Assembly: GCF_902652985.1 (NCBI RefSeq)
Contig: NC_047016.1
Location: 42,842,001 to 42,906,000, forward strand
Length of the DNA stretch: 64,000 nt
Source: Pecten maximus
Taxonomy: Eukaryota
Direction of reading: 5' to 3'
Positions within the stretch are counted from its first letter, which is position 1. Every line of letters starts with the position of its first letter. The translations under genes and the position numbers were made by a program. Positions 601 to 54,954 of the stretch are shown in pieces. The notes beneath the pieces were generated by a model. The model was given only the letters and a program-made list of their open reading frames with translations, made no database searches and had not been told where the DNA came from.

Positions 601-914
601 AGGGGCATTCCTTCGTTTGAGTAAAGTTTAGGTCGTCAAAATTAAACTTACTGGAAGATATACATTTTATCCAAGTAGTAAAAGTTATCATCTTTACATT
701 AATACGGTAGTTTTATTCTCAAGGTAAACCGAAGTTCTTCGAGTATTAAGTCCTGAAAGTTCTTAATTCGACCCGAAGTATCATGCCTTTTCCTGTATAT
801 TTCGGCGTTAATTTCATTACATGTAGGTACAAACACTTATATAATCATCGTTCGGACATATATTCCATTAATAGAAATTGTGTATTTCTGATGTCCGAAC
901 GAAGGAATGCCCCT
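601..914. mobile_element. Non-autonomous MITE, Kolobok-like
   Basis: Terminal inverted repeats aggggcattccttcgtt (601-617) and aacgaaggaatgcccct (898-914), flanked by tta/ttaa. AG...CT termini at a TTAA-like target fit Kolobok-type elements. Confidence 0.6.
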
Positions 915-1518
915 TTAAGTTCAACGTCCAGGACATGGCAAAAATGTATTTTTAAGTCAACCACTGAGCTTTATCTTATCAAGTTTTTCCAAAACCATCA
1001 TCTTAAACGGAGTATACTGTATTTAGCCCACTGTATTCAATAATCTTGTTGATTGGTCCAGACTGGCAGTCCCGTTATCTACCCTTATCCTAAGTACAGT
1101 GACCCCTTGGTATCTCAGTCCTTAAATTACTTCAGTTATTGATAGGATGTTCAACATTACTAAACCAAACCAAATCCTCGGTATCTGTGCAATATATCAC
1201 AAACTGATCACGTTATGTCTAAAAAAAAATCCAACTTTATGAGTTTATGTTCCAATTAATACGACACAGCGTAATTAAGGCCGTTGACTGTCGTTTGTAA
1301 CGCACATCAATAATCATATTAAACTTTTCCTCAAATTCGTATGACTTTTTATCTCGTTCATACGAGTTTTACCTCGCACGACTTTTTTTTTTATCTCATT
1401 TGTACGAGTTTTTATCTCGTTTAAATGCGTTTTTAACTCGCTCGTACAAGCACAACTTCATTGTTATTCATTAAATGTGAAACAAAAGTAAAACATGTTT
1501 ATTGAATTCTTTTCAGAA

Positions 1519-1962
1519 ATGACCCACGTGGCTGCATTCCTTCTGTGCTTATTTGTGACGTCAGTGGATTCACGAGCTGTATCACCTCATTTATGGAACT
1601 TAAACGGCCACGCCCATGTGCACCTATCCAGCCAACCGGGCGACCAAGTTCATAAACCTAGCACTTCCGTCGACAACGCCCCTAGACCACTTCAGACGTA
1701 TCTCCCAATTCACAAAGGGGATACAATCTGGATGGACGTTGTACTGGATGGTATACACATGGATGCCATCCCGGAAGTTTTTATCCCTATGGCCGTGTTA
1801 CGGGAAAGAAAGTCATTGTCGTCAAGTGTGTCCTCCAGGAGAGCACGCGACACGTCGGTGACCACGTACTGCGCGACACCGGAGTGTATGCATCTGATGC
1901 TGGAATATGAACATTGGAGGAATGAACATGGTTATCCAGACACTTATGGAAGATGGGGGTGA
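1519..1962 (+). CDS. Secreted prohormone-like precursor A (147 aa), predicted C-terminal 36-aa disulfide-ring RW-amide peptide
   Basis: Splice acceptor ttttcag ends at 1516, just before AAATG (ATG 1519), so the track start at 1495 is probably intronic. Signal peptide MTHVAAFLLCLFVTSVDS, furin-type site RRAR, then DTSVTTYCATPECMHLMLEYEHWRNEHGYPDTYGRW-G-stop, with the terminal Gly as amide donor. Confidence 0.8.
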   Translation: MTHVAAFLLCLFVTSVDSRAVSPHLWNLNGHAHVHLSSQPGDQVHKPSTSVDNAPRPLQTYLPIHKGDTIWMDVVLDGIHMDAIPEVFIPMAVLRERKSLSSSVSSRRARDTSVTTYCATPECMHLMLEYEHWRNEHGYPDTYGRWG

Positions 1963-2190
1963 TGTGATCGGGACGAAGTCGCGCTTTTCTGCCATTTGTG
2001 ACCTGAATTTATATCCAAATATTTTGATATCTTGATTGATCTGTAGCGATTGTGTACGGAAATGGAACGCTGTGCTAGTTATCGCCCCTGTTGTATAAAA
2101 TATAAAGCCATATAAAAATATATTCCAAATATATTGTGCCAGAAAATTATTTTGATAAATTTCATGTATAAATATGTAAGATAATTGTTT

Positions 2191-2614
2191 TATTGTGTCG
2201 CCTGCGAAAAGCAACACTATGTCGGCGTCGGCGGTGTCGGCGGCGTCGTCCGCACAAAGGTTTCCGTGTGATGACTCAAATTCCCTTGGCTGGATCAAAC
2301 TCAAACTTCAGGCAGATCTGCCTTGTCACAAGTGATTGCTTATGATTGCTTTTCAGGTCCGAAGGTCAAAGGTCAAGGTAATTGTTACTAAAAATAGAAA
2401 ATGTGTTTCCGTGCGTTAACTCAAGTTCCCTTGGGCCGATCAGACTCAAACTTGCAAACGTGCAGTTTTTCCTTACAAGTGTTTTCATGAGATTCCTTTA
2501 CTGGTCGAAAGGTCAAAGGTCAAGGGTACTCTTACTATAAATAGAAAATCTGTTTCCATCTCTAGTAATCACCTAACTTCTTGCGCGGGTGACACATCCA
2601 ATGGAAATCTAGTT
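2191..2614 (+). mobile_element. Helentron-associated non-autonomous element (HINE/pearl-like)
   Basis: Subterminal inverted repeat tgtgtcgcctgcg (2194-2206) / cgcgggtgacaca (2584-2596); (gtcggc)n microsatellite; two ~145-bp internal repeats carrying aaggtcaaaggtcaagg; short 3' hairpin and ctagtt end. Confidence 0.6.
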
Positions 2615-4084
2615 TAGTATAGTGCACGCCCCCCGTGCGTGCGTCCGTCCTTGATAGCGTTGTGTACACATGGACAGATTTCAGATTCACACCAGAACAT
2701 CACATCATCAAGGTCTACACCAGATTCTGTTTCGTTGGTCATCGGTCAGGATGAAAGGATGAAGATCACTCTTAACCACTTTGAAAATAAAAATTATGTT
2801 TATCCTATAAAACGACGTGATGTTGACTACACGATAGTGACGTGTTATGGCACAGACCGGGACATAAAATGATGTTAGAATTTACTCAACTGACACTTTA
2901 ACCGGACTGATTCCATAGTTACTGAAGCGGCGGACATGGAAGATGAAAAACAGCACAACCGAGCGCTCGGTAGGGTCCAACTCGAGAGAGCATTAATCCT
3001 AAAGATCTAAGGGTTCTATAGCCATCCTCTATCAAGGACATTTCTGAAACTCCCAGCCGTGTGTTGAAATCTCACAAGATTCAATGTTGTTTCAAACCAT
3101 CCAACAAATTAGGACAGAATCTTAAGAGGCCTAAAGACAAAACACACAAGAAAGACCTTAATACCTAGCTGCGATAACGTAGCTCTGGACGACGGACGGA
3201 CAATTTTTGACAGATGGTCGTCGTCAGAGCTACGATTCCCTCCCATTGCTCGTAATGTAGCAAAACCGTGAACCTCGAAAATGCTACAAATAGCGGATAT
3301 CGTTTAACTTTGGAGTAATAGTTCGTATAATTAAACATTTCTAATTCAATTTTGCAGTGTATTAGCCTACCGTCTTATCTAGAAATCTTTAATTCGCATA
3401 TTCTGATATCATACTGCTCGGAGTTGTCTCCGTGTCCGCCATGATACTTCTCGAAGAACTCTCGCGAGGATTCTAACCCAAATATGGAACCCGTGATCCA
3501 TATATGGATGAAGCTACTACGATAAATAAATACATAATCAGAGATATTTAACCACTCTTTTGTAACTCTTGTGAAGAAAGCGAATCTTACTTTGCGTAAT
3601 TAAATAATTTCAGAATGAATTGACCTTCCTTACCGAGATATATTACTCAGAATCTGTTTTTCTGTTGAAATCTCGCGGGAAACCTCATTAGCATCAATTT
3701 ATTTTGATTTCCTTATAAGGAAATTGACCTTTACACTTGTATCAAAGATGGCGGTATGTTTGAACTGATATCTCCGTGTGTCTTGCTCGTTTTGGATTTT
3801 ACTATTTATTGTCAAACATTTGAAGTAATGTGCAGGTTTGTTGCTTGAATATTCATAATAGATACCAGAATCATCAATTTACATGGGTTTTTTTATCCGA
3901 GAAAAAATTTACCACTGCTAATACTGCCCGATGTCAGAGACATATATATGTCTCTGCCGATGTGAATCACATCGGGGCTTGCTACACTATCGGCAATGGG
4001 AGGGACTTCATACCCTGCCGGAGAGCAGTGTAGGCAGGGTATGAATATTCGTTCTACCTTGAGCATAGACGACCTTGCTCAGTT

Positions 4085-4380
4085 TTATCCTCTGAGGTGG
4101 CCAAACATATCCATCTTGAATCCCCGGGTCATTCCATCGTCTTGGATGAGTTCCGTGTACTGGATGGTGGCCTGGGCTATATTGAACGTGGGATTCGGGA
4201 GGCCATTAACATCTGCCTGTACCAGCCGATCCTCAGCCAGGACAGGGGGAGATACCGACTACCAGGGGTCTATGACTCGCACCTGAGGTCACGTGTCCGA
4301 AAGGTCACGGGATCGCAGGTAAATCCACCTGGGTATAAGTCCTACTGAGGAAGATCACAGTAGTGGTCCAAATATCTAAG
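4085..4380 (+). mobile_element. Penelope-like element 3' fragment (GIY-YIG endonuclease C-terminus)
   Basis: Translation VAKHIHLESPGHSIVLDEFRVLDGGLGYIERGIREAINICLYQPILSQDRGRYRLPGVYD matches the typical PLE C-terminal pattern (ER..REAI.I....P.LN.D.G.Y.LP..Y). A hammerhead-like motif follows. Confidence 0.75.
4341..4380 (+). ncRNA. Degenerate minimal hammerhead ribozyme (PLE-associated)
   Basis: CTGAGGA (4345-4351), A, stem GATCAC-agta-GTGGTC, then CAAA in place of GAAA, then TATC. It sits right at the end of the PLE ORF. Confidence 0.5.
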
Positions 4381-4387
4381 TATGTAT

Positions 4388-4655
4388 TTCTCGAGATACA
4401 TTACGCTCTATACATTACACTCGAGATACATTACACTCTAGATACATTTCACTCGAGATACATTACACTCTAGATACATTTCACTCGAGATACACTACAC
4501 TCGAGATACATTACACTCGAGATACATTTCACGCGATTCATTACACTCGAAATTCATTGCTCGAGATACATTACACTCGAGCAACATTACACTCGATACA
4601 TTACTCGAAATACATTACACTCGATACATTACTCGGGATACATTACACTCGAGAT
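4388..4655. repeat. 16-bp minisatellite (cactcgagatacatta)n
   Basis: About 16 degenerate tandem copies visible directly. Confidence 0.9.
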
Positions 4656-5106
4656 ATGTGCGTGTTCATATTTTCTACATTGTCAATTAAGTTCAATAGC
4701 CTAACGTCACAACAGTGTTCCCATGGTGACACCGGGTTCATTTATATATATTTTGTCCATGTGTATAGATATTAACGGCGCATAACATCTGATTTAAAAT
4801 GAAAGATTTTCACAAATCATTATTGCTGTGAACACGTTGTTTATTATGGAATAATGTCCAATGTTAATTCTCATTATAAAGCGCGTACATGATAAAGCAA
4901 TGAGATTCAATTCAATATTTTCTTATTGACAAAAATATAGATAAAGTTATACATGTTATAATCCATTCAAAAGTGAACCCGAATTTACCTTTAAAGGGAT
5001 ACATTCAGAGAATACCACGATGCATTAAACCGCACAATTTTCATTTCTTCTTTGGTAGTGTTGGCGTCCTCGTGAAATTTCAAACAAAATAGATCTAAAC
5101 AATGGC

Positions 5107-5505
5107 TCATCGACGTCCAAAACTGCCTACTGCATCCGGATAGCTTGGATCTAACGAAAGCATATGGTCAATGCATTCCTGTGTTTGGCACCACGCTTCC
5201 GCCCCGTACTTCCGGTTTGTCCGTTTCCTATTGCGATATAGTCCAGAAAGATAACGATACAGGATTTTTTGTTTAGGTGAAAGGTTGGTGTTTTGTGGTC
5301 TTACTAAACCTATCCCAACAAATCTCCTCTTCCAAAATGGGATCTTGATGTGGGATCCCGGATAGGGCACGTGATGTCTCGCAGTAGCAGTTAAATTTAT
5401 CAGTTTAGATTTTTGGATTGTATCATCTTTACCACGAACTAAGGTGGAGTTCAATGGACAAATCCACACCGATAGCATGATCACTGAAAGAAAAGAAATC
5501 AGCAT
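5107..5505 (-). CDS. Secreted prohormone-like precursor B (132 aa), predicted C-terminal disulfide-ring F-amide peptide; paralog of precursor A
   Basis: Hydrophobic N-terminus MLISFLSVIMLSVWIC; basic sites KRR, RNRKR and RK; C-terminus YGAEAWCQTQECIDHMLSLDPSYPDAVGSF-GRR-stop (amidation signal). Candidate acceptor cag 10 nt upstream of the ATG; AATAAA on the minus strand at 4845-4840. Confidence 0.8.
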   Translation of the reverse strand: MLISFLSVIMLSVWICPLNSTLVRGKDDTIQKSKLINLTATARHHVPYPGSHIKIPFWKRRFVGIGLVRPQNTNLSPKQKILYRYLSGLYRNRKRTNRKYGAEAWCQTQECIDHMLSLDPSYPDAVGSFGRR

Positions 5506-6152
5506 ATAGCGTTACCTGTTCCAGCAACATTATTTTAATTTAGGAGAAAACATCTAAGTGACTGAATGCAAACAACAACAACAACAACAACAACAACAAA
5601 AAACAAAAAACAAACAAACAAACAAAAACAAACAAAAATTTAAAAAAGCTAGCAATGAATAAAAGTAGCTTAAAAATTACTATATCTTATCTTCAAATGA
5701 TCGAAAGTGAAAATTCATTCAGTGAACATTTGTCACGAAAAAACGGGACAAGTTTTATGTTATAATTCATGATCAATTAATTATACATTTACATATAAAT
5801 GTATAAATTATACATTTCATATAAAGGTTTAATTATGTTGAATGGTATAATTCATTATCAATTAATTATACAGTTATTGAGCAATATAACTTTTAATTAA
5901 CAAATAAATATGTAGTGAAATACTTACAGCAAACTGGCAGCATGATGGCTTGTAGCTCCATCGTGCATGTAAGGTCGAATTCAAATACATGTCGGTTCTG
6001 TAATGGGACATTACTGTACACACAGTGGTATAGGATCTCTAAGTGGACGTTTATGTTTGCTGATTGGTTTTCTTTGATAGTTCTTGATAAACAGGGTGCC
6101 GGTAGAGACAAACCCCAGGTAGTTTACAAATTGTACTTACTTTGGCGGTCTG

Positions 6153-6185
6153 TTTATGGAACGGGTTACGTATTTCGTGACGTCA
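6153..6185 (-). promoter_or_regulatory. Candidate promoter of precursor B: full CRE plus TATA-like box
   Basis: Palindromic TGACGTCA at 6178-6185 and CATAAA on the minus strand at 6158-6153. A minus-strand gtaagt donor near 5927 could end a non-coding first exon. Confidence 0.35.
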
Positions 6186-7030
6186 CACGATCGTGCTAGA
6201 GGAGGTATTTTCGGGCTAGTTTCAATGAATTTATCGGTTACTATAACAGGACGGTGGGTGAATACACCGGAAGTGGTCTGTTATCATCAAACTTAAACCT
6301 CCCACGATTCAGTGTGTTGGTTCGATCATGAATTCTTTGTTGTTTAAATTTAATGTGGATATAAGTGTTGATTTGTATAAATACAAATAACATCAGAATG
6401 GGTAATACTACGGGAAAAGTTAATAAAATACCACACAGGGTCAAAATGTCAAAACTTAACACAAATGGAATGAGAAGAGACTTAAGCTGTGTAGTCAACG
6501 TATCGGAAGGGCGCGGAATGCTGACATCATTACAAACGGAACTAACTTCCCCACTAACAATGGAAAGGTGGGGTTCAAGCCGATGTTAAATTTCCCGTCG
6601 ACATCACCAACACCCGAATTTCGTTCAAAGTTTGCATGTTTGTATAGCACTATGCATGGCAATACAAAATATACACTTGCTTATTCATCTTTTACATTGA
6701 AAAGGTCCAAATGGCCCAAATGTGCAGTGAATTGACGATATGTCACAACATGCCTAAATGATTAAGCGGAACATAGTTGATTTTTAACATTTTTAAAACC
6801 AGACTATCGCCCAAAAATTAAAATTAGAAAAAAAAAAAAAAAAAAAAACTTGCTACATGTATGATATAAGTTTTGTACACCATTCTGATTTATTTCAAAA
6901 TTAGCTTCAATATGTGTTCTATCACCAGGAAAATTTTGAAAAGAATTGAAATATGGGAATGTGGTTGTCGTACAGCTGAAACGCTAATGGTGCAAACTTT
7001 TGGATTTGAGAAAAGTGTCAACTAAGAGGG

Positions 7031-14619: not shown

Positions 14620-15765
14620 GCGTTATCTAGTATCATTAATATCCATACCTCATGAAAGAGTATTTTACCATATAAACCATATGCAATAGCCATTAAGTGT
14701 AATACTTATCCATACCTCATTAAAAAGAGTCTCACAGTATACAATAGTATCATACACTGTCATTATCATCCATACCTCATTAAAAAGAGTCTCACAGTAT
14801 ATTATAGTATCATACACTGTCATTATCATCCATACCTCATTAAAAGCTTTCTCATAGTATACAAAAGTATCATACACTGTCATTATCATCCATACCTCAT
14901 TAAAAGGTTTTTCATAGTATACAATAGTATCATACACTGTCATTATCATCCATACCTCATTAAAAGGTTTCTCATAGTATACAATAGTATCATACACTGT
15001 CATTATCATCCATACCTCATTAAAAGGTTTCTCATAGTATACAAAAGTATCATACACTGTCATTATCATCCATACCTCATTAAAAGGTTTCTCATAGTAT
15101 ACAATAGTATCATACACTGTCATTATCATCCATACCTCATTAAAAGGTTTCTCATAGTATACAAAAGTATCATACACTGTCATTATCATCCATACCTCAT
15201 TAAAAGGTTTCTCATAGTATACAAAAGTATCATAAAATGTCATAATTATCCATACCTCATTAAAAGTGTCATAGTACACAGTATTATCATAAAGTGCCAT
15301 AATTATCCATACCCCATTAAAACGTGTCACAGTATACAAAAGTATCATAAAATGACATAATTATCAATACCTCATTAAAAAGTTTCACACCGTCTACAAT
15401 AGTATCATTAAGTTTCATACATATCCATACCTCATTAAAACGTGTCGCACAGTATACAAAAGTATCATAAAATGTCATAATTATCCATACCTCATTAAAA
15501 AGTTTCATACCTTCTAAATAGTATCATTAAGTGTCATACTTATGCATACCTCATTTAAAAGGTGCACATGGTATGAAATAGTACGATTAAGTGTCATAAT
15601 TATCCATACCTCATTAAAAGTGTCACACAGTATAAAATCATATCATTCTGTGTCATACTTATCCATACCTCTTTAAGAACTGTCATAGTACACAGTATTA
15701 TCATAAAGTGTCATAATTATCCATACCTCATTAAAACGTCTAACACAATATACAATATTATCATT
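14620..15765. repeat. 60-bp minisatellite
   Basis: catacctcattaaaaggtttctcatagtatacaatagtatcatacactgtcattatcatc; near-perfect from 14701 to 15240, degenerate on the flanks. Confidence 0.95.
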
Positions 15766-18690: not shown

Positions 18691-19784
18691 CACCTAAAAA
18701 CCAAAAGTGAGGCAGTGTAAAGAGAGGAATTAAGGCATTTGTTGCTAAGAAAGAGCAGAAATGATGAGATCTCAAATTTAGTCGCCATTTACAGTCATAA
18801 AATGGGGACAGAAAGTATAATTCTTATGCCTTACTAAAGAATTTTGTCATGGCGATAAAAGAGTATGTAAAACAATGCTAACAAAAATAAAAAATCTTAC
18901 AGAGCATTACCAGTTTAAAGACAACATAAATGTCAAAATGGCGATCTTGATTACTTCATCCTTTATGTTCAACATTAAAGGCCTGTTTTTTCTTTGTGTG
19001 GAATGTTACTTGTTTTGAGAACAAACTAAATAGTATCGTTTGGTTTAGAAAGGTTCTTGAAATAGCCGCCACTTGATGTAAAAAAAAAAGTTTCATTAGA
19101 TAGAAGAGTTTCATTTGGGGTTTCCTTCAACAGGTACCGAAATAGCTTTCGTTGTTTTGATTGATTACTTAATGTGGAATTAAGTAAATCAATTCTATAC
19201 ACACAAGTACAATAAAACGCCGAAACCTTTCTCACACTTGTAAACATTGTTTCCGTTGACCGTATTTAGTTATTCGTAGAAGCTGGTAAGTTTCATTAGT
19301 GGAAAAACCAGTGTCCTCTTTGTTGCCTGCTACGATCACGAATGCATTGACAAAGTGAAAGTTGATGTAGTTAGGTTAACTTATCGTTTTCGTAACAGTC
19401 ATTCACAGCTGATATTGCTTGATGATGTATCACCTCAATTAAAGCATAACAAAACGAATAAAAATGCTGAAAGCCGCAATATGCATTCTTCGTGTCAGGC
19501 AGTGCAGACACAACGGGGAAACATATAAACTTCGAGACGTCATCGGAAAGTAAAATTGAAACAATGTACAACAACAATGCTTATTATATATAAGTACATT
19601 AAGCAAAGCTATCGGGTACAACATTGTACTCCTGCTCTTTACTCACATGATTTAAATGTACGTGTTCAATCTTATGTCTGTGCATGGAATGTTGTATTCA
19701 AGCGTGCCAAACTGTGCGTGACGTACTGATTGTATTAAAAAATATACTTCAGTAGACTTTGTTTGAAATCAGCATGGATTCTGT

Positions 19785-20533
19785 ATCATCAGTACCATTG
19801 AGTTTGGTATATCTTTTGTACCATTGAGTTTGGTATATCACCAGTACGATTGAGTATGGTATATCACCAGTACCATTGAGTTTGGTATATCACCAGTACC
19901 ATTGAGTTTAGTATATCCTCAGTACCACTGATTTTAGTGTATTCTCAGTACCATTAAGTTTGGTATATCATCAGGACCAATGAGTTTAGTATATCATCAG
20001 GACCATTGAGTTTGGTATATCCTCAGTACCATTGAGTTTGGTATATCCTCAGTACCATTGAGTATGGTATATCCTCAGTACAATTGAGTTTGGTATATCA
20101 CCAGTACCATTGAGTTTGGTATACCCTCAGTACCATTGAGTATGGTATATCCTCAGTACAATTGAGTATGGTATATCACCAGTACCATTGAGTTTGGTAT
20201 ATCACCAGTACCATTGAGCTTGGTATATCACCAGTACGATTGAGTATGGTATATCACCAGTACCATTGAGTTTGGTATATCACCAGTACCATTGAGTATG
20301 GTATATCACCAGTACCATTGAGTTTGGTATATCACCAGTACCATTGAGTTTGGTATATCACCAGTACCATTGAGTTTGATATATCCTCAGTACCATTGAG
20401 TTTGGAATATCATCAGTACCATTGAGTTTAGTATATTCTCAGGGCCATTAAGTTTCGTATAGCCTCAGTCCCATGGAGTTTGGCATAGCCTCAGTCCCAT
20501 TGAGCTTGGTATATCATCAGAACCATTGAGTTT
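19785..20533. repeat. 26-bp minisatellite (cagtaccattgagtttggtatatcac)n
   Basis: About 28 tandem copies visible. Confidence 0.95.
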
Positions 20534-23313
20534 GTTTGGTTTTGAGTCTAGTTAATGACGTTGTACGTCACCAATTCTCCTTTTTGATATGTAACTGTCT
20601 CCTCAGGAAGTACCTTTTATCTTCTTTATTATGGGTTGCAGTTCCTACGAAGATTATTAACTCATATTTAGCAAAGTACAAGACAGCTGGGCGCTTATAG
20701 TTTAGGTAAAGCATTCAAAGGCATACATACTTTTTTCGATATAAAATCTAAATTTACATAAACATAAATTTTGTGTTTTGATATCTTCGCCCCGGGTGGT
20801 GAATAAATCAAATATAATGACCCTGGGAATGTCATCATCTGAAATATATAATGTTTGTAGGCAAACAATATACAGCAGATCATACATACTATACCTATCT
20901 GAACTATCTTCCACCAGTCAAACTTTTAGTAATATTACATTAAATTGAAGAGAATATCAAAATTTCGTCAGGAAATCTGATTCTATAAATAAAACTTGAT
21001 CGTCAGTGCTTGAAATTGACTTGCTCGACATGAAAATTAATGTAGATAAAATATAATCATAATTTGTATAATGAAACGACCGTCAAATATGAATGAAATC
21101 AAACAGAATTGTGATGGTATTTCAGACGATAAGCCGTAGTGTCAATAAAGTCAAAAGTATATGAAGAAGCATCTATCTTCATATCGCGCACGAAACCTTA
21201 CTTTATCAATGAGGTCGTGCCGGAATCATATTTAACATGGCATGGGTATTGACAATATATAGAGAGCGAGAGTAGATTGAATATGTTTTTTCCCCATGAA
21301 TGAACACGTTTTACTTCTTAAAATACTTAATTTGCTCACATGTTTGCACCCATTCGACGTGATGCCTTACGTGAGAGGTATAACCAGTGTGTCAATATGA
21401 CAATATGTATAACCAAAGATTTCTCTCTGTAACACATTCGTGTTTTCCTGACACGATTAAAGGGATAACTAACAGAACAAATCATGTTCAATTAACACAC
21501 ATTGTTTCTTAATGTATCCTTTGATAAAATACACGTTTCTTTCTATTTCTATGTTGGTTTAAAGCTAATTTAACAGTATTTATCATCTTCAGATTCTAAT
21601 CAGTACTTTCGTATTAATCTTGTGAAAATTCATGATCTCCGTGTTGTTAAAATAGATGGGGTGTAGGTATGTCACTACATGTAATAACTTTTTGTGTATG
21701 AGATTGTTATGTTTGGACGAAATTTCCGCACTTTCGGAGATAGCTGTCCTTCCAGTTAAACTCCAATTCAGGATAAGACTACATACAATTAACTGTCCGC
21801 AATACAATGGAATAAACGGCAGTTAGAGAGGGTAATGGTTCATTTCGTAGCAGGTGTGCTTGGAAGAGATTCATTCTAGACATTGTATCATAAAGGGGCC
21901 CTGCAGCGTTGTTCGAGAAATTTAAAACCCTCATTATAGTAAATGGTAGTCTTGGTCTGTATTCGTGTCAGTGGGTTGTGTTTGTAAACGGTTGGATGGA
22001 AAACGAGAGGGATAAAATCACTTATCTATCTACCAAAGCTGATAATTAACATGGTTCTACATCTACGGGTATAACGACAGTAAATTGATAATGTTTTTAA
22101 CTGATCAACAGGCAAAATATTCTGGCGGCTATGATAGTAATTATTAAATCAAAATGTCAAAAAGGTGTGTTTTTTCGCGGAAAATAGCCAATAATTATCT
22201 GTATAACTTTTATTTTCAATTCATTAACATTAACAAAAATGATAAAATAACCCTTTAGTGGACATGTGACTGCTATTTTCTATCAAAACTTTGTCTGATT
22301 AATCTTCGTTTGATGACTACTGGTGAATTTTATTTTATTGGCATGTTGTAAAATGTGTCTTTGCTAGATGTTTTACAAGGGATATTTAGATATAAACAAA
22401 CAAACAAAAACATCTTGATGATATATACATTTAACACCGAAATCACATTAAAAGATGCCTGTATAAGTTTAAGTTGTCCCATTGTAATTGATCATTGCTA
22501 TCGTTAATGAAAGGAAGCTTACATTCAGTCGTTCTGCACAGTGGTCTTTTAAAAATTACATTTCAAAATTACGTCATTATGTAGAGGAAATCTATTTATA
22601 GTTCAGAACTAAAATACCTTTACTGATGTGTATTGAATTTTAAACAATAAAGTAATTTTCCCTTCTGGAGCCTCAGCAAACTGTGGTATTTGATAAATCA
22701 TAATTACACACTTCCTGTTTTTGCCCATATTAGCCACATAGCATCTATGTGGTTATTTGTCCGTATGAATGGGTCGTCTCTGTTTTCTGCATGGCAAGCT
22801 TGTTTAAAGGTTTTTGATAGACATCCATTACATAATGATACTGTATCTATTTATCAAATTAATTTAATATATTGATAAACAATGATCGGAGTGATATCAG
22901 TTGCTTTTTGTGATGGATATTATTTTTGAAACAACAGTCAATATTATATTGTTGGATGAATCAATCCTGTATACTAATGGCTTCATAACCATATTAGGGT
23001 ATTGGGTTACTTTTTCACCAAAGCTATGCAAACCATTTGAAACCGCAATGTAGTAGAAGCGTGGAGTTAGGGAATAAAGTAATAATTTAAAGGAAAATTA
23101 TGAAGAAATTAGGTAATGTAAAGTAAGAAAAATATAAAATAATTTCAAATGCAAAATGAAACATAAACAAACTTTGTCACATCACTGACATTTTACTGCA
23201 TGATACATTTATATCATGTGGACCCATTACCTGTCATAGGCCTCTGTAATTAGCAAATATTCGTCTACGTAAAGTCACGTAAATAAGTAGGTGGTGACAT
23301 CATTCAATAAATG

Positions 23314-27894: not shown

Positions 27895-29047
27895 GCAATC
27901 TAATGTTGTGGTCAGGATTATTCCTGTATGAGATTAGCCCTGAGTACCAGTAATGTTATGGTCGGGTTTATTCCTGTATGATATTAGCCCTGGGTACCAG
28001 TAATGTTATGGTCGGGTTTATTCCTGTATGATATTAGCCCTGGGTACCAGTAATGTTATGGTCGGGTTTATTCCTGTATGATATTAGCCCTGGGTACCAG
28101 TAATGTTATGGTCCGGATTATTCCTGTATGATATTAGCCCTAGGTACCAGTAATATTATGGTCCGGATTATTCCTGTATGATATTAGCCCTAGGTACCAG
28201 TAATATTATGGTCCGGATTATTCCTGTATGATATTAGCCCTGGGTACCAGTAATGTTATGGTTAGGTTTATTCCTGTATGATATTAGCCCTGGGTACCAG
28301 TAATGTTATGGTCGGGTTTATTCCTGTATGATATTAGCCCTGGGTACCAGTAATGTTATGGTCGGGTTTATTCCTGTATGATATTAGCCCTGGGTACCAG
28401 TAATGTTATGGTCGGGTTTATTCCTGTATGATATTAGCCCTGGGTACCAGTAATGTTATGGTCCGGATTATTCCTGTATGATATTAGCCCTGGGTACCAG
28501 TAATGTTATGGTCGGGTTTATTCCTGTATGATATTAGCCCTGGGTACCAGTAATGTTATGGTTAGGTTTATTCCTGTATGATATTAGCCCTGGGTACCAG
28601 TAATGTTATGGTCGGGTTTATTCCTGTATGATATTAGCCCTGGGTACGAGTAATGTTATGGTCCGGATTATTTCTGTATGATATTAGCCCTGGGTACCAG
28701 TAATGTTATGGTCGGGTTCATTGCTGTATGATATTAGCCCTGGGTACCAGTAATGTTATGGTCGGGTTTATTCCTGTATGATATTAGCCCTGGGTACCAG
28801 TAATGTTATGGTCGGGTTTATTCGTGTATGATATTAGCCCTGGGTACCAGTAATGTTATGGTCGGGTTTATTCCTGTATGATATTAGCCCTGGGTACCAG
28901 TAATGTTATGGTCGGGTTTATTCCTGTATGATATTAGCCCTGGGTACCAGTAATGTTATGGTCGGGTTTATTCCTGTATGATATTAGCCCTGGGTACCAG
29001 TAATGTTATGGTCGGGTTTATTCCTGTATGATATTAGCCCTGGGTAC
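27895..29047. repeat. 50-bp minisatellite, ~22 copies
   Basis: ttcctgtatgatattagccctgggtaccagtaatgttatggtcgggttta repeated head-to-tail with no unique spacers. Confidence 0.97.
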
Positions 29048-34480: not shown

Positions 34481-35664
34481 AAGAAGAAAATCATAACAAA
34501 AAAGACAATAAAAGTCCCAATTTAGCCCCCTCTTACGAGCTGACGTGATGAGTATTCTCGTGGTAATGACCCTCCCCCCCCCCCCCCCCTAAAACCTACG
34601 ATAATTATATAATATCTCTGTTGTTGGTCTTCCTTTAATCTCGGACAACAGCAAGTAAACTTCTCCATGAAGTATAAAAACAAGATATTTATAACATGTA
34701 TTCAATTTGATACAATAGTAATGTGACATTATTATCTTTTTGATGGCAGCTTACCTGAAATGTTTTGTAAATCTGCATAAATAAACGTTTATAAAGCAGC
34801 ATGGATATCTATATCTAAATATCAACACAGAATTTTATAAAGTGAAAATGAGTAATAATGGTGTAATCGTACACCTCCTTCTGTAGTCACACAGAAGAGG
34901 GCGTTAACATACCTATTTGTATAGGTATGTCAGCGTAGGTGAACAGATACTATAGAGTATTAGGTATTCTCTAGATAATTACCTGTGTAATCGGATGCTG
35001 GTAGTATCTTGTAACAGTCAGGTAAGAAAGGTATGTACCCAGTCTCCGCGACTACATACATTGACATTCCAAGGTATAATCTGGAAACTGATATTAAGAC
35101 AAGATAATTCTTTATACAGGTGATAGCATTTAAAGGCTTCTACATTAGACCTCTTAGCAAATACTTAACATATGTTATATTATTGATGTACAAATTCTGA
35201 TTTTGTTTAATTACAGCGACGATTGTTTGTAATTATTTCTTTAAATTTTACCCGAATACTTTTTTTTATATATAACATAATTCCGGAGCCTCGGGAACAC
35301 TCCCATTACAGGACTCTTTTTACAGCTCATTTTCTTAGTCGTGTTTACAAATGAAGCGAGCGTGGTTGTGACTTGTTTAGGATGCTGCCGAATATGGCTA
35401 TCATATGCTGATAAATATACTATCTGCCTTGGCAAACGATGTATAACAGGTGTACCTGATATTTCCTCGCTTCAGTATATATTTCATGCAATAAATTTTG
35501 GTAGAAACATTCGTCCTACAAAATACGTATATCACCGCACAGTTACATAAGTTGTTGTGATAATATATTCAGGTTGATGAGATTAAGCAAGTCAGTATAT
35601 CCTAAGAGGATTTGTCCATTACGAACAAAATATAGAGTCTAATAGTGACAACATGTTTATATGT

Positions 35665-36588
35665 CCACATGTGGCTACCCTGTCATGTTTATGTTTCCTC
35701 GTGTGGCTACCCTGTCATGTTTGTGTTTCCTCGTGTGGTTACCCTGTCATGTTTGTGTTTCCTCGTGTGGTTACCCTGTCATGTTTGTGTTTCCTCATGT
35801 GGTTACCCTGTCATGTTTGTGTTTCCTCGTGTGGTTACCCTGTCATGTTTGTGTTTCCTCGTGTGGTTACCCTGTCATGTTTGTGTTTCCTCATGTGGTT
35901 ACCCTGTCATGTTTGTGTTTCCTCGTGTGGTTACCCTGTCATGTTTGTGTTTCCTCGTGTGGTTACCCTGTCATGTTTGTGTTTCCTCGTGTGGTTACCC
36001 TGTCATGTTTGTGTTTCCTCGTGTGGTTACCCTGTCATGTTTGTGTTTCCTCATGTGGTTACCCTGTCATGTTTGTGTTTCCTCGTGTGGTTACTCTGTC
36101 ATGTTTGTGTTTCCTCATGTGGTTACCCTGTCATGTTTGTGTTTCCTCGTGTGGTTACTCTGTCATGTTTGTGTTTCCTCATGTGGTTACCCTGTCATGT
36201 TTGTGTTTCCTCATGTGGTTACTCTGTCATGTTTGTGTTTCCTCGTGTGGTTACCCTGTCGTGTTTGTGTTTCCTCGTGTGGTTTCCCTGTCATGTTTGT
36301 GTTTCCTCGTGTGGTTACCCTGTCATGTTTATGTTTCCTCGTGTTGTTACCCTGTCATGTTTGTGTTTCCTCGTGTGGTTACCCTGTCATGTTTGTGTGT
36401 CCTCATGTGGTAACCCTGTCATGTTTGTGTTTCCTCGTGTGGTTACCCTGTCATGTTTGTGTTTCCTCGTGTGGTTACTCTGTCATGTTTGTGTTTCCTC
36501 ATGTAATTACCATGTCATGTTTGTGTTTCCTCGTGTGGTTTCCCTTCATGTTTGGGTTTCCTCAAGTGGTTTCCCTGTCATGTTTTTG
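35665..36588. repeat. 32-bp minisatellite (gtgtggttaccctgtcatgtttgtgtttcctc)n, intronic
   Basis: About 28 copies. It explains the three overlapping Cys-rich ORFs in the track. Confidence 0.97.
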
Positions 36589-36695
36589 TGTATAAGGCAT
36601 CCAGGTATGATATTTTATCTGCTTTTTTCAGCGATTGTTCACGTTTTTCTTTGAGGCCTCTCAATTATGTTGGACATCTTAATCTTTCATTGCAG

Positions 36696-51892: not shown

Positions 51893-52790
51893 ACGGTTGA
51901 AGCTTACCATACTTGTTAGATAGCTGAACCATGCTTGTTTGATAGCTGAACCATACTTGTTAGATAGCTGAACCATACTTGTTAGATAGCTGAACTGGGC
52001 TTGTTATATGGCTGAACCATACTTGTTTATATGAAGATCTGTTAGACTGATACTTGTTTATGCGATAGCTTGAACCATACTTGTTAGATAGCTGAACCAT
52101 ACTTGTTATATAGCTGAACTATACTTGTTATATAGCTGAACTATACTTGTTATATAGCTTAACCATACTTGTTAGATAGCTGAACCATACTTGTTAGTAG
52201 CTGAACTTGTTATATAGCGACAACTTGTGATATACTGAACCAACTTGTTATAGCTGATACTAGACTATGTTAGATAGCTGAACCATACTTGTTAGATAGC
52301 TGAACCATACTTGTTATATAGCTGAACCATACTTGTTATATAGCTGAACCATACTTGTTAGATAGCTGAACCATAGTTGTTATATAGCTGAACTGGGCTT
52401 GTTATATAGCTGAACCATACTTGTTATATAGCTGAACCATACTTGTTATATAGCTGAACCATACTTGTTATATAGCTGAACCATACGTGTTATATAGCTG
52501 AACCATACTTGTTATATAGCTGAACCATGCTTTTTATATAGCTGAACCATGCTTGATATATAGCTGAACCATACTTGTTAGATAGCTGAACCATACTTGT
52601 TATATAGCTGAACCATACTTGTTATATAGCTGAACCATACTTGTTATATAGCTGAACCATACTTGTTAGATAGCTGAACCATACTTGTTATGTAGCTGAA
52701 CCATACTTGTTATATAGCTGAACCATACTTGTTATATAGCTGAACCATACTTGTTATATAGCTGAACCATACGTGTTATATAGCTGAACC
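51893..52790. repeat. 22-bp minisatellite (tagctgaaccatacttgttata)n
   Basis: About 40 copies, indel-rich around 52020-52270. Confidence 0.95.
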
Positions 52791-53345: not shown

Positions 53346-54500
53346 AGGACGAGGGTTGGGGAGAGGGCGAGGGTAGGGGAGGTGGCGAGGTAGGGGAGAG
53401 GGTAAGGGTAAGGGAGAGGGCGAGGGTTGGGAAGTGGACGAGGTTTGGGGAGAGGACGAGGGTTGGGGAGAGGGCGAGGGTAGGGAAGTGGACGAGGTTT
53501 GGGGAGAGGACGAGGGTTGGGGAGAGGGCGAGGGTAGGGAGAGGGTGAGGGTAGGGGAGGGCGAGGGTAGGGGACAGGGCGAGGTTTGGGAGATGGCGGG
53601 GGTAGGGAAGAGGGCGAGGGTTGGGGAGAAGACGAGAGTAGGGGAGAGGACGAGGGTAGGGGAGAGGACGATGGTTAGGGAGAGGGCGAGGGTTGGGGAT
53701 AGGGCCAGGATTGGGGAGAGGACGATTGTTAGGGAGAGGACGAGGGTTTGGGAGAGGACGAGGGTTAGGGAGAGGGCGAGGGTAGGGAGAGGGCAAGGGT
53801 AGGGGAGAGGGCGAGGGTTGGGGAGAGGGGAGGGGAGATTGCGAGAGTAGGGAAGAGGGTGAGGGCTGGGGAGAGGGAGAGGGCGAGGGTTGGGGAGAGG
53901 GCGAGAGTAGGGGGAGAGGACGAGGGATGGGGAGAAGACGAGGGTTAGGGAGAGGGCGAGGTTAGGGGAGAGGGCGAGGATTGGGAAGAGGACGAGGGTT
54001 GGGGAGAGGGCGAGGGTTGGGGAGAGGGCGAGGGTTGGGGAGAGGCGAGGTGAGGACGAGGTTGGGGAGAGGGCGAGGGTAGGAGAGAGGGCGAGGGTTG
54101 GGGAGAGGGCGAGGGTTGGGGAGAGGACGAGGTTGGGGAGAGGACGAGGGTTAGGGAGAGGGCGAGGGTTGGGGAGAGGGCGAGGGTAGGGAGAGGGCGA
54201 GGGTAGGGGAGAGGGTTAGGGTTGGGGAGAGAGCGAGGGGAGGGGAGAGGGCGAGAGTATGGGAGAGGGCGAGGGTAGGGGAGATGACGCGAGTAGGGGA
54301 GAGAGCGATGATAGGGGAGAAGGCGAAAGTAGGGTCGAGGGCGACAGTAGGGTCGAGGGCGATGATAGGCGAGAAGGCGATAATAGGGGCGAGGGACGAT
54401 GGCGAGGTAGGGGAGAGGGCGAGGACGAGGGAAGGGGAGAAGACTAAGACGAGGGTAGGGGAGAGGGCGAGAGTAGGGGAGATGGCAGGGACAGGGGAGT
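53346..54500. repeat. G-rich polypurine 18-bp satellite (gggagagggcgagggtag/ttg)n
   Basis: More than 1 kb of strongly purine-skewed tandem units containing GGG runs. Confidence 0.95.
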
Positions 54501-54954
54501 GGGGATGCTAGTTATCCGAGTGTCTTTTGATCATCACATTTCCGCCAGATTTCGGACAGAATGTCGGTAGGTGGAAAGGGTCTCGGTGATATCGAAAAAA
54601 ACATGAATTACCGACACCAGACGGTATCAGGCCACGGTTCACTTCAGATATGAGGGTTTAAAAAATACATACATTTCGTCACTTACCTTAACACGATCGT
54701 TCATGAGTAATATGATTACCTGTTAAGGTTGTTTAGACAAATGTATTTCGTCGTCCGTGACGTCTAGGGGACACAAGTCACGCGACGTAAAGACGAGAAT
54801 ATGGTTAAAGCAAAGCTGTCACAGCGCAATTGAGTTTATTTTTTTCACGTTCACGTTTATTCAATAGTAAACCCTCTCATTCTGGATTGATCAATATTGT
54901 AAATTATGTACGTCTCTTTTGTATTTTGAACTTGGTATGAATCTTCCTGATAAT

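What the first reader, a model, noticed from the sequence alone, without database searches (positions are those of the whole stretch)
1519..5505. Convergent pair of paralogous prohormones defining an apparently unnamed disulfide-ring amidated peptide family
Seen: two tail-to-tail ORFs, each in a single coding exon, with a signal peptide, unrelated pro-regions, a furin-type site (RRAR; RNRKR/RK) and an amidation Gly. Only the predicted mature peptides align: YCATPECMHLML...YPDTYGRW-G versus WCQTQECIDHML...YPDAVGSF-GRR, giving [YW]C-x-T-x-EC-x3-ML-x(5-8)-YPD-x2-G-x-[WF]-amide. Established: conservation limited to the processed C-terminal peptide is typical of peptide hormones. Inference: an old inverted duplication of a hormone gene that I cannot match to a named molluscan family (not conopressin, CCAP, elevenin, luqin, NPF, ELH or Pro-amide calcitonin). 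This is the best candidate for an undescribed signalling system in the window.
Basis: partly seen in the sequence, partly recalled or inferred. Interest (0 to 1): 0.9.

Follow-up and report, generated by a model that had tools for sequence, protein, structure and literature searches.

The report
Paired GGRWamide-type prohormone genes, scallop
Two neighbouring, transcribed king-scallop genes encode precursors of small disulfide-ringed, C-terminally amidated peptides; they belong to a conserved but uncharacterised mollusc family that is probably the counterpart of the 'GGRWamide' peptides so far reported only from ribbon worms.

Summary
The window is Pecten maximus. The two tail-to-tail ORFs are the annotated but uncharacterised genes LOC117322159 (A) and LOC117322160 (B). 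Both are transcribed and spliced. B is also polyadenylated.

A whole-library HMMER search found relatives in other bivalves and in gastropods, all unnamed. They share a gap-free 31-residue C-terminal core: x-C-x-T-x-x-C-[VIM]..[ML]..Y..WR..[NH]GY[GP]...G[RK]W-Gly. The core is 58% identical across members, against about 20% for the pro-regions.

Peptide A is a clear member. Peptide B is a divergent pectinid paralogue with a 5-residue deletion and an F-amide end.

The family's NGYxxxGGRW-amide tail and EC[VI] start match the nemertean 'GGRWamide' precursors of Thiel et al. 2021, who reported them as nemertean-only. One multi-copy relative (P0007) carries motifs of both types.

The tail also resembles lophotrochozoan CCK/sulfakinin (YGxGGGR[FW]amide). 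The ring-helix-amide layout resembles CGRP/amylin. No sequence test supports membership of either family.

Receptor, tissue and function are unknown. My verdict is a real, orphan peptide family that is new for molluscs but not a new kind of system.

The parts
1517..1962 (+). Gene A (LOC117322159), coding part of exon 2. The acceptor AG is at 1515-1516, the signal-peptide Met at 1519 and the stop at 1960-1962. Exon 1 (MSSFTEEK, donor GT) lies outside the window, 648-672 bp upstream of position 1 (L022:9328-9352).
   Evidence: RNA contigs start at the acceptor (1515) and carry 57-91 further letters from an upstream exon.
1519..1572 (+). Predicted signal peptide of A (MTHVAAFLLCLFVTSVDS), with V-D-S at positions -3 to -1.
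   Evidence: Read from the sequence. No SignalP tool was available, so this is an inference.
1834..1848 (+). Furin/PC-type site S-R-R-A-R before peptide A.
   Evidence: The orthologue P0003 has R-S-T-R at the same place.
1849..1959 (+). Peptide A: a 36-mer (D...GRW) plus the amidation Gly (1957-1959). It contains the ring CATPEC and the family's 31-residue core.
   Evidence: The HMM built from 5 non-pectinid members scores it 55.9 bits, against a maximum of 13.9 in 5000 shuffles. AF2 gives a confident helix over residues 130-145 of P0001.
1963..3193 (+). 3' UTR of A, at least this long. The true 3' end was not determined, because the contig breaks at a repeat.
   Evidence: X1 contig spans 1515-3193.
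4826..5483 (-). Gene B (LOC117322160), exon 2: CDS 5107-5483 and 3' UTR 4826-5106.
   Evidence: X5 and X6 contigs cover 4825/4826-5483. The X5 contig carries a T-run before 4826, which is the poly(A) tail of the minus-strand RNA. A poly(A) signal lies at 4840-4845.
5119..5208 (-). Peptide B, a 30-mer (YGAEAWCQTQEC...VGSF). It is followed by Gly (5116-5118), Arg-Arg (5110-5115) and the stop (5107-5109).
   Evidence: The family HMM scores it 15.3 bits; 0 of 5000 shuffles reach that, with a shuffle maximum of 14.1. The orthologue P0004 keeps WCQTQECIDHM and ends ...GNFGR.
5209..5235 (-). Basic cluster R-N-R-K-R-T-N-R-K, offering alternative cleavages that would give a 34-mer or a 30-mer.
5484..5927 (-). 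Intron of B, 444 nt, GT..AG on the minus strand.
   Evidence: The joint 5483/5928 is seen in two runs of two studies, one of them recorded as an RNA-seq library.
5928..6146 (-). Exon 1 of B: 5' UTR plus the first 11 codons (MELQAIMLPVC, 5929-5961) and the first base of codon 12.
6178..6185 (.). Perfect palindromic cAMP-response element TGACGTCA, about 32 bp upstream of the 5'-most RNA contig base of B.
   Evidence: Any function is an inference.

Best explanation
The locus holds two paralogous, convergently transcribed prohormone genes.

**Inferred processing route**
1. Each product enters the secretory pathway through an N-terminal signal peptide.
2. A largely disordered pro-region is removed at furin/prohormone-convertase sites: RRAR in A, RNRKR/RK in B.
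3. The C-terminal Gly is converted by peptidylglycine alpha-amidating monooxygenase (PAM) to an aromatic amide: W-NH2 in A, F-NH2 in B.
4. The two Cys residues close a 6-residue ring (C-x-T-x-x-C).

The ring caps a roughly 16-residue helix, which is followed by a flexible amidated tail.

**Family placement**
- Peptide A is the scallop member of a family conserved in bivalves and gastropods, with a gap-free 31-residue core ending ...NGY[GP]xxGGRW-amide.
- Peptide B is a fast-evolving pectinid duplicate.
- The family is most likely the molluscan orthologue of the nemertean GGRWamide precursors.

**Shown versus inferred**
- Shown: the genes, their transcripts and splicing, the poly(A) tail of B, family conservation, and the predicted helix.
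- Inferred: cleavage, amidation, the disulfide bond, hormone or neuropeptide function, and the receptor class.
- The likely receptor is an as-yet unidentified G-protein-coupled receptor (GPCR). The aromatic-amide-binding RFa/Wa group of rhodopsin-beta receptors and the CCK/SK-type receptor are the first candidates.
For: - Identity to P. maximus proteins LOC117322159 and LOC117322160.
- Spliced RNA contigs for both genes and a poly(A)-tailed contig for B, from several studies.
- Variants in RNA contigs are 5 synonymous to 2 non-synonymous.
- The whole-library HMMER search returned 9 further proteins at E<=1e-3, from Nucella, Littorina, Batillaria, Mercenaria and unnamed assemblies. All match through their C-terminal peptide.
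- The 31-residue core has no indels and is 58% identical, against 20% for the pro-regions. Eleven positions are invariant.
- An HMM trained without scallop sequences scores A at 55.9 bits and B at 15.3 bits, both above all 5000 shuffles.
- Nearly all members end W/F-Gly followed by a stop or a basic residue.
- AF2 is confident only for a helix at residues 130-145 of P0001. The rest is disordered.
- The nemertean GGRWamide units read KR-[DE]-E-C-V-L-K...NG[YF]T[ST]DGGRW-G-R. Mass spectrometry there detected the spacer peptide that begins right after GGRWGR.
- P0007 combines a nemertean-type first unit (C-Q-LP..P...Y..CL) with two mollusc-type units scoring 28 and 35 bits.
Against: - No peptide from this family has been detected in a mollusc.
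- Tissue of expression is unknown, because run identities are coded.
- The Yesso-scallop ganglion neuropeptidome (63 precursors, including de novo prediction) did not list the family.
- Several relatives (P0006, P0008) have no basic site just upstream of the core, so the mature N-terminus is uncertain there.
- In P0003/P0012 the Gly is followed by 38 more residues instead of a stop.
- The link to nemertean GGRWamide rests on motif comparison by eye and on one bridging protein of unknown taxon. It was not scored formally. The Cys spacing also differs: C-x4-C in molluscs against C-x16-C in nemerteans.
- Peptide B's family score is only marginally above the shuffles.
Confidence: 0.7

Rival explanations
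1. The peptides are true calcitonin/CGRP-superfamily members: a CGRP/amylin-like, aromatic-amide branch in molluscs acting on class-B calcitonin-receptor-like GPCRs.
For: - The layout is the same. There is a 6-residue N-terminal ring with Thr at ring position 3 (C-x-T-x-x-C; CGRP/amylin C-[DN]-T-A-T-C, recalled from general knowledge).
- A helix follows directly after the ring, then a flexible tail ending in an aromatic amide. Length is 30-36 aa and there is a single copy per precursor.
- Peptide B additionally shows I-D-H-M-L and V-G-S-F-amide, reminiscent of CGRP V-T-H-R-L and V-G-S-K-A-F-amide (also noted in s1-794540).
- Most mussel CALCR-like receptors lack a known endogenous ligand (PMC7200681).
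Against: - No Pfam hit for any of 12 members at E<=10.
- No PDB-sequence hit to calcitonin, CGRP, amylin or adrenomedullin chains with either peptide or with the family profile at E<=10.
- The CGRP-like residues of B are absent from the wider family and only partly kept in B's own orthologue, which reads IGNF. They are therefore derived.
- Molluscs already have bona fide CT-type precursors with Pro-amide ends.
- The residue before the second Cys is Glu, not Thr.
Confidence: 0.08
2. The family is a paralogous offshoot of the lophotrochozoan cholecystokinin/sulfakinin (CCK/SK) peptides and signals through CCK/SK-type receptors. This could hold together with the GGRWamide assignment.
For: - The last eight residues are in register with lophotrochozoan CCK/SK. 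The family reads Y-G-T-S-G-G-R-W-amide. Mollusc and brachiopod SK reads Y-G-L-G-G-G-R-F-amide, and also F-G-G-G-R-W-amide and Y-G-F-A-G-G-R-W-amide (sequences in the PMC8557429 supplement).
- Tyr at position -8 is invariant.
Against: - SK peptides are short, Cys-free, occur about twice per precursor and are flanked by dibasic sites. They have an acidic D-Y context for sulfation, whereas here the context is N-G-Y.
- Scallops have a separate canonical CCK/SK gene.
- There is no Pfam gastrin/CCK hit.
- Eight Gly-rich residues can converge.
- The two scallop peptides have lost the GG (YGRW, VGSF).
Confidence: 0.12
3. The products are secreted but not hormonal, for example antimicrobial or defence peptides, pheromones or matrix peptides. 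Alternatively, the whole pro-protein is the functional unit.
For: - Tissue of expression is unknown.
- Some of the holding runs are recorded as metatranscriptomic libraries.
- The family is absent from the scallop ganglion catalogue.
- Some relatives lack a cleavage site in front of the core.
Against: - The strict conservation of a C-terminal Gly amidation signal and the invariant aromatic/Arg pattern are hallmarks of receptor-binding peptides.
- The peptide A 36-mer has slightly more acidic than basic residues, unlike typical cationic antimicrobial peptides.
- A CRE sits upstream of B.
Confidence: 0.1

Closest known systems
Nemertean GGRWamide precursors ('MS peptide 4'; Thiel et al. 2021, PMC8557429)
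   Same: - C-terminal ...NG[YF]-x-x-x-GGRW-Gly followed by a basic residue or stop.
- Glu-Cys-Val at the start of the unit.
- An aromatic pair in the middle (DY..Y against EY..W).
- Two Cys per unit.
- Tyr at -8 from the amide.
- Orphan status, with no receptor known.
- P0007 carries both motif types.
   Different: - Nemertean precursors hold 3-7 units, whereas the mollusc ones hold a single unit at the extreme C-terminus.
- Cys spacing is C-x16-C against C-x4-C.
- The nemertean unit is about 7 residues longer after the EC.
- The W-R dipeptide and the ring Thr are mollusc-specific.
- Homology was not scored formally here.
Lophotrochozoan cholecystokinin/sulfakinin peptides (e.g. oyster ...DYGLGGGRFamide and FDYNFGGGRWamide)
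   Same: The C-terminal octapeptide register Y-G-x-x-G-G-R-[FW]-amide.
   Different: SK peptides have no Cys ring and no helix segment. They are short, come from multi-copy precursors and place the Tyr in an acidic sulfation context. A separate SK gene exists in scallops.
Vertebrate CGRP / amylin / adrenomedullin (calcitonin superfamily)
   Same: What it looks like: a C-x4-C ring with Thr at ring position 3, a helix straight after the ring, a flexible tail, an aromatic amide, about 30-37 residues, one copy per precursor (family features as summarised in PMC12638048).
   Different: No detectable sequence relationship. The Thr before the second Cys is replaced by Glu. The receptor is unknown.
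Molluscan calcitonin/DH31-type peptides (scallop Calcitonin 1 and 2; mussel CALCI/II)
   Same: An N-terminal disulfide, C-terminal amidation and about 31-40 residues.
   Different: Those have C-x6-8-C rings and an invariant Pro-amide. They come two per precursor and share no sequence similarity with this family.

Membership tests
Spiralian GGRWamide (as defined by the nemertean precursors in PMC8557429) | C-terminal G-G-R-W followed by Gly and a basic residue or stop (amidation signal) | tested here: met
   GGRWG is at the C-terminus in P0005, P0006, P0008, P0009 and P0013, and SGRWG in P0010. Pecten A has Y-G-R-W-G-stop. Pecten B has diverged to V-G-S-F-G-R-R.
Spiralian GGRWamide | N-G-[YF] four residues before GGRW, and [DE]-C-V at the start of the unit | tested here: met
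   [NH]21-G22-Y23 and E6-C7-[VIM]8 are conserved in all 7 A-type cores. The nemertean units were read. The comparison was by eye only.
Spiralian GGRWamide | Two Cys per unit about 17 residues apart, and several units per precursor | tested here: not met
   Mollusc members have a C-x4-C ring and one unit. Only P0007 is multi-copy, and its units lack Cys.
Spiralian GGRWamide | Statistically supported sequence homology to the nemertean precursors | not tested
   The nemertean sequences exist here only as text from a paper supplement and have no session reference.
Calcitonin/CGRP superfamily | N-terminal pair of Cys forming a ring (PMC12638048) | tested here: met
   C2 and C7 are invariant. Disulfide formation itself is inferred.
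Calcitonin/CGRP superfamily | C-terminal amide, Pro-amide in all members except CGRP-like ones | tested here: inconclusive
   The amidation signal is present, but the amidated residue is W or F, not P.
Calcitonin/CGRP superfamily | Detectable similarity to Pfam family models or to solved CT/CGRP/amylin/AM chains | tested here: not met
   No hit at E<=10.
Calcitonin/CGRP superfamily | Activates CTR/CLR-type class-B GPCRs | not testable with these tools
   Needs a receptor assay.
CCK/sulfakinin (lophotrochozoan type) | C-terminal Y-G-x-G-G-G-R-[FW]-amide core | tested here: inconclusive
   Y-G-x-x-G-G-R-W is in register in the gastropod members. The scallop peptides read Y-P-D-T-Y-G-R-W and Y-P-D-A-V-G-S-F.
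CCK/sulfakinin (lophotrochozoan type) | Short Cys-free peptides, about two per precursor, each flanked by dibasic sites, with Tyr in an acidic context | tested here: not met
   There is a single unit of 30 aa or more with a Cys ring, and the Tyr context is N-G-Y.
Amidated neuropeptide/peptide-hormone precursors (generic) | Signal peptide, basic cleavage site, C-terminal Gly, conservation confined to the peptide, and a transcript | tested here: met
   The signal peptide was judged by eye.

The most novel reading that the evidence does not exclude
GGRWamide is a spiralian-wide orphan peptide system found in molluscs, nemerteans and at least one further lineage represented by P0007. In molluscs it took on a CGRP/amylin-like form: a disulfide-capped helix plus an aromatic-amide tail. 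It may be the missing endogenous ligand of one of the orphan lophotrochozoan receptor groups. Candidates are the CALCR-like receptors that mollusc calcitonins do not activate, or a member of the RFa/Wa-amide GPCR expansion. The scallop A/B pair would then be a ligand duplication in the course of diverging.
Probability: 0.15. Interest if true: 0.8.

Novelty: new member of a known kind. Interest (0 to 1): 0.5.

Why it matters
Lophotrochozoan peptide-receptor maps still contain orphan ligands and orphan GPCRs.

This locus supplies a conserved ligand family that the mollusc catalogues I could search do not list. The family has an exact 31-residue signature that can be used to mine other genomes.

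It also ties that family to a peptide so far regarded as nemertean-specific. That would turn a lineage oddity into an ancestral spiralian system.

The scallop pair offers a natural experiment in ligand divergence: W-amide against F-amide, with a 5-residue deletion.

The predicted peptides and their masses make peptidomics and receptor deorphanisation directly testable. It is not a new kind of mechanism.

Tried and rejected
- **Word-indexed protein searches.** Searches with A, B and the 12-sequence alignment found only self or sequences already known. They were uninformative about distribution.
- **Own-genome searches.** Protein and degenerate-pattern searches for further paralogues gave 17 pattern hits against 33 for the reversed control. 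Apart from A and B, no hit continues into the family motif. I conclude there are only two copies in P. maximus at this stringency.
- **Pfam and PDB sequence searches.** Nothing relevant was found. The best PDB hits (Mediator subunit 31, cullin-3) are chance-level, E>=0.15.
- **ESM Atlas.** No usable hit.
- **Literature string searches.** Peptide substrings and locus names gave no paper. 'CGRP-like mollusc' returned nothing relevant.
- **Supplements of the mollusc catalogues.** PMC5996578 and PMC6425005 do not contain the motifs in the parts held. Some of those files were cut when stored, so absence is not proven.
- **The look-up of encoding contigs.** The taxa and genomic context of P0003, P0004 and P0007-P0009, and the conservation of the tail-to-tail arrangement, could therefore not be examined.
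- **Formal scoring of outside sequences.** Nemertean GGRWamide, SK/CCK and vertebrate CGRP/amylin sequences were not scored against the family HMM.
- **Exon joining.** The spliced proteins used are the database entries P0001 and P0002.
- **Chance ORFs.** This reading is rejected, given the transcripts and orthologues.
- **CGRP homology of peptide B.** Considered and downgraded, because the CGRP-like residues are derived.


Full report
**1. What is in the sequence**

The window is Pecten maximus chromosome contig C2:42,842,001-42,906,000.

- ORF A (1495-1962, +; Met at 1519) is 100% identical to part of NCBI protein LOC117322159 (P0001, 156 aa).
- ORF B (5107-5505, -) is 98% identical to part of LOC117322160 (P0002, 136 aa).
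- Both proteins are annotated 'uncharacterized'.
- The ORFs are convergent, with stop codons 3.1 kb apart.
- A BLASTP comparison aligns only the last ~42 residues: 13 identical, E = 2e-4.
- The cleavage and amidation motifs read exactly as reported. A has S-R-R-A-R|DTSVTT-Y-C-A-T-P-E-C...G-R-W-G-stop. B has R-N-R-K-R-T-N-R-K|YGAEA-W-C-Q-T-Q-E-C...G-S-F-G-R-R-stop.

**2. Gene structure and expression**

Public runs of the same species hold the locus. I laid contigs of four runs from four studies on 800-6500.

Gene B:
- Two runs, one recorded as an RNA-seq library, give a contig covering 4825/4826-5483 joined directly to 5928-6146.
- The skipped 444 nt have CT..AC ends on the plus strand, which is GT..AG on the gene's strand.
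- One contig carries a 21-nt T-run before 4826. That is the poly(A) tail of a minus-strand mRNA.
- A poly(A) signal lies about 15-20 nt upstream, at 4840-4845.
- The join reproduces P0002: exon 1 encodes MELQAIMLPVC (5929-5961), and codon 12 is split across the junction.

Gene A:
- Contigs of two runs begin at the acceptor (AG at 1515-1516) and carry 57-91 additional letters that do not lie in 800-6500.
- The missing exon (ATG TCG TCA TTT ACG GAG GAA AAA G|gt) lies 648-672 bp upstream of window position 1 (L022:9328-9352). It reproduces the MSSFTEEKE start of P0001.
- The hydrophobic signal sequence follows the Met at 1519.
- One contig runs on to 3193, so the 3' UTR is at least 1.2 kb.

The spliced proteins used downstream are the database entries P0001 and P0002.

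Seven variants fall in the coding parts of the RNA contigs. Five are synonymous. Of the two non-synonymous ones, one is in B's variable linker and one in its pro-region. The count is small but fits purifying selection.

A perfect CRE palindrome (TGACGTCA, 6178-6185) sits about 32 bp upstream of the 5'-most transcript base of B.

**3. The family**

- Word-indexed searches returned only the two proteins themselves.
- A full HMMER pass over 1.84 billion representatives, with a profile of P0001+P0002, found nine more proteins at E<=1e-3.
- Named sources are Nucella lapillus, Littorina saxatilis and Batillaria attramentaria (gastropods) and Mercenaria mercenaria (a heterodont bivalve).
- The others come from unnamed ENA and Logan assemblies. 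All are 'hypothetical' or 'uncharacterized'.
- P0003 is an A-type orthologue (47% identity over 142 aa, E = 4e-40). P0004 is a B-type orthologue (46% over 79 aa, E = 9e-23).
- The A/B duplication therefore predates that divergence.

In every A-type protein the matched part is the extreme C-terminus. From the residue before the first Cys to the terminal Gly it is exactly 31 residues long, with no indels.

- The core signature is x-C-x-T-x-x-C-[VIM]-x-x-[ML]-x-x-Y-x-x-W-R-x-x-[NH]-G-Y-[GP]-x-x-x-G-[RK]-W-G.
- Eleven positions are invariant.
- Mean pairwise identity is 58% in the core, against 20% for globally aligned pro-regions.
- An HMM trained only on five non-scallop members scores peptide A at 55.9 bits, against a maximum of 13.9 in 5000 composition-preserving shuffles.
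- The same HMM scores peptide B at 15.3 bits, against a shuffle maximum of 14.1, with 0 of 5000 shuffles reaching it.
- A is thus a clear member. B is a divergent copy with a 5-residue deletion and an F-amide end. Its membership is backed mainly by the identical ring context, its position next to A and its own orthologue.
- A degenerate-pattern scan of the whole genome found no third copy.
- AlphaFold2 on the 12-sequence alignment is confident only for a helix at residues 130-145 of P0001, from inside the ring to W-R-N-E. The pro-region and the last 10 residues are disordered.

**4. Mechanism (inferred)**

- The route is signal-peptide cleavage, convertase cleavage, amidation of the residue before Gly, and ring closure. 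The product is a disulfide-capped amphipathic helix with a flexible aromatic-amide tail.
- This is the standard design of receptor-binding peptide hormones.
- Nothing here shows the peptide itself, the tissue or the receptor.
- Caveat: P0006 and P0008 lack a basic site just before the core.
- Caveat: P0003/P0012 read through the position of the stop...GKWG-WNHT....
- Caveat: the Yesso-scallop ganglion study, with 63 precursors, does not list this family.

**5. Comparison with known families**

(a) Nemertean GGRWamide.
- Thiel et al. 2021 found this precursor by mass spectrometry in Lineus. They stated that it was identified only in nemerteans.
- Its repeated units read K-R-[DE]-E-C-V-L-K-S-N-P-Q-P-Q-D-Y-V-D-Y-V-M-C-L-Q-x-N-G-[YF]-T-[ST]-D-G-G-R-W-G-R.
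- The spacer peptide beginning right after GGRWGR was detected by MS.
- The mollusc core shares E-C-V at the start, an acidic-Tyr...aromatic pair in the middle, and N-G-Y-x-x-x-G-G-R-W-Gly at the end.
- P0007 (264 aa, taxon unknown) bridges the two. After its signal peptide comes C-Q-L-P-P-N-P-S-A-K-D-V-R-N-Y-Q-L-C-L, the pattern of the first nemertean unit.
- P0007 then has two dibasic-flanked units...YHEWREKNGYGNAVGRWGR and ...EEYKQWRQDHGYGKFTGRWGR. These score 28 and 34.8 bits against the mollusc-only HMM.
- I rate orthology at about 0.65.
- It was not scored formally.
- Differences are the copy number and the Cys spacing.

(b) CCK/sulfakinin.
- Lophotrochozoan SK peptides end Y-G-[LFW]-[GAS]-G-G-R-[FWY]-amide, as shown by oyster, pearl-oyster, Aplysia, brachiopod and nemertean precursors in the same supplement.
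- This is in register with the family's Y-G-T-S-G-G-R-W-amide.
- The likeness is a lead to a possible common origin or a shared receptor type. It does not establish membership, because the architecture differs and scallops have a separate SK gene.

(c) Calcitonin/CGRP.
- No Pfam model and no solved CT/CGRP/amylin/AM chain matches either peptide or the family profile at E<=10.
- B's CGRP-like residues are not shared by the wider family, and its own orthologue keeps them only partly.
- Known mollusc CT peptides are Pro-amides with larger rings.
- The family 'works like' CGRP in shape, but membership is not supported.

**6. Novelty and verdict**

- The genes are annotated but uncharacterised.
- I found the family in no paper text. 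It is also absent from the parts of the mollusc catalogue supplements that are held.
- It is a new molluscan branch of an orphan spiralian peptide family. It is an ordinary kind of system (an amidated peptide precursor) and not a new signalling principle.
- Interest is moderate. It extends a 'nemertean-only' peptide to molluscs, gives an exact signature, and sets up deorphanisation.

**7. Limits**

Taxa and synteny of the unnamed relatives are therefore unknown.
- Run identities are coded, so tissue is unknown.

Noticed in passing
window 3165-4057: A repeat element lies between the two genes, with 27-nt inverted repeats at 3237-3263 and 3979-4005 (85% complementary). It is very abundant in RNA-type contigs (word depth of several hundred to about 2000, far above the 25-50 over the two genes). 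Many contigs join about 3208 to about 4021, so other copies lack the internal ~800 bp. It looks like a MITE-like or deletion-derivative transposon family.
   Followed up: partly
window 6178-6185 and 1556-1563: There are two perfect CRE palindromes (TGACGTCA). One is about 32 bp upstream of gene B's transcript 5' end. The other lies inside gene A's signal-peptide coding sequence and is probably coincidental.
   Followed up: no
P0003 / P0012 (Logan assemblies, A-type orthologue): The amidation Gly is followed by W-N-H-T... and 38 more residues where P. maximus has TGA. This could be a stop-codon change, loss of amidation in that species, or an alternative 3' end.
   Followed up: no
P0001 residues ~83-104 (window ~1740-1805); P0003, P0005, P0006: There is a second conserved block in the A-type pro-region: [LI]-D-G-[IV]-[PH]-x-x-x-[IL]-P-x-x-F...A-V-L. 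It is repeated three times in the Nucella precursor. It may be a sorting motif or a second product. The B-type proteins instead conserve I-K-I-P-F-W-K-[RG]-R-F-V-G.
   Followed up: no
window 14708-15764, 19784-20534, 27901-29047, 35652-36589, 51906-52790, 53346-54503: The rest of the window is repeat-rich and gene-poor. It holds large minisatellite arrays with periods of 60, 26, 50 (23 copies, 96% matches), 32 and 22/44 bp. A G-rich 18-bp array explains the GC-skew peak of +0.38 at 52-56 kb.
   Followed up: no
window 4390-4656 and ~5565-5640: A 16-bp tandem array (17.6 copies) lies in the intergenic space. A (GTT)n/(GTTT)n microsatellite lies inside gene B's intron.
   Followed up: no
window 1822-2304 (-): A 160-aa antisense ORF (TTG start) overlaps the 3' end of gene A. 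It has no support and is taken as a chance ORF.
   Followed up: no
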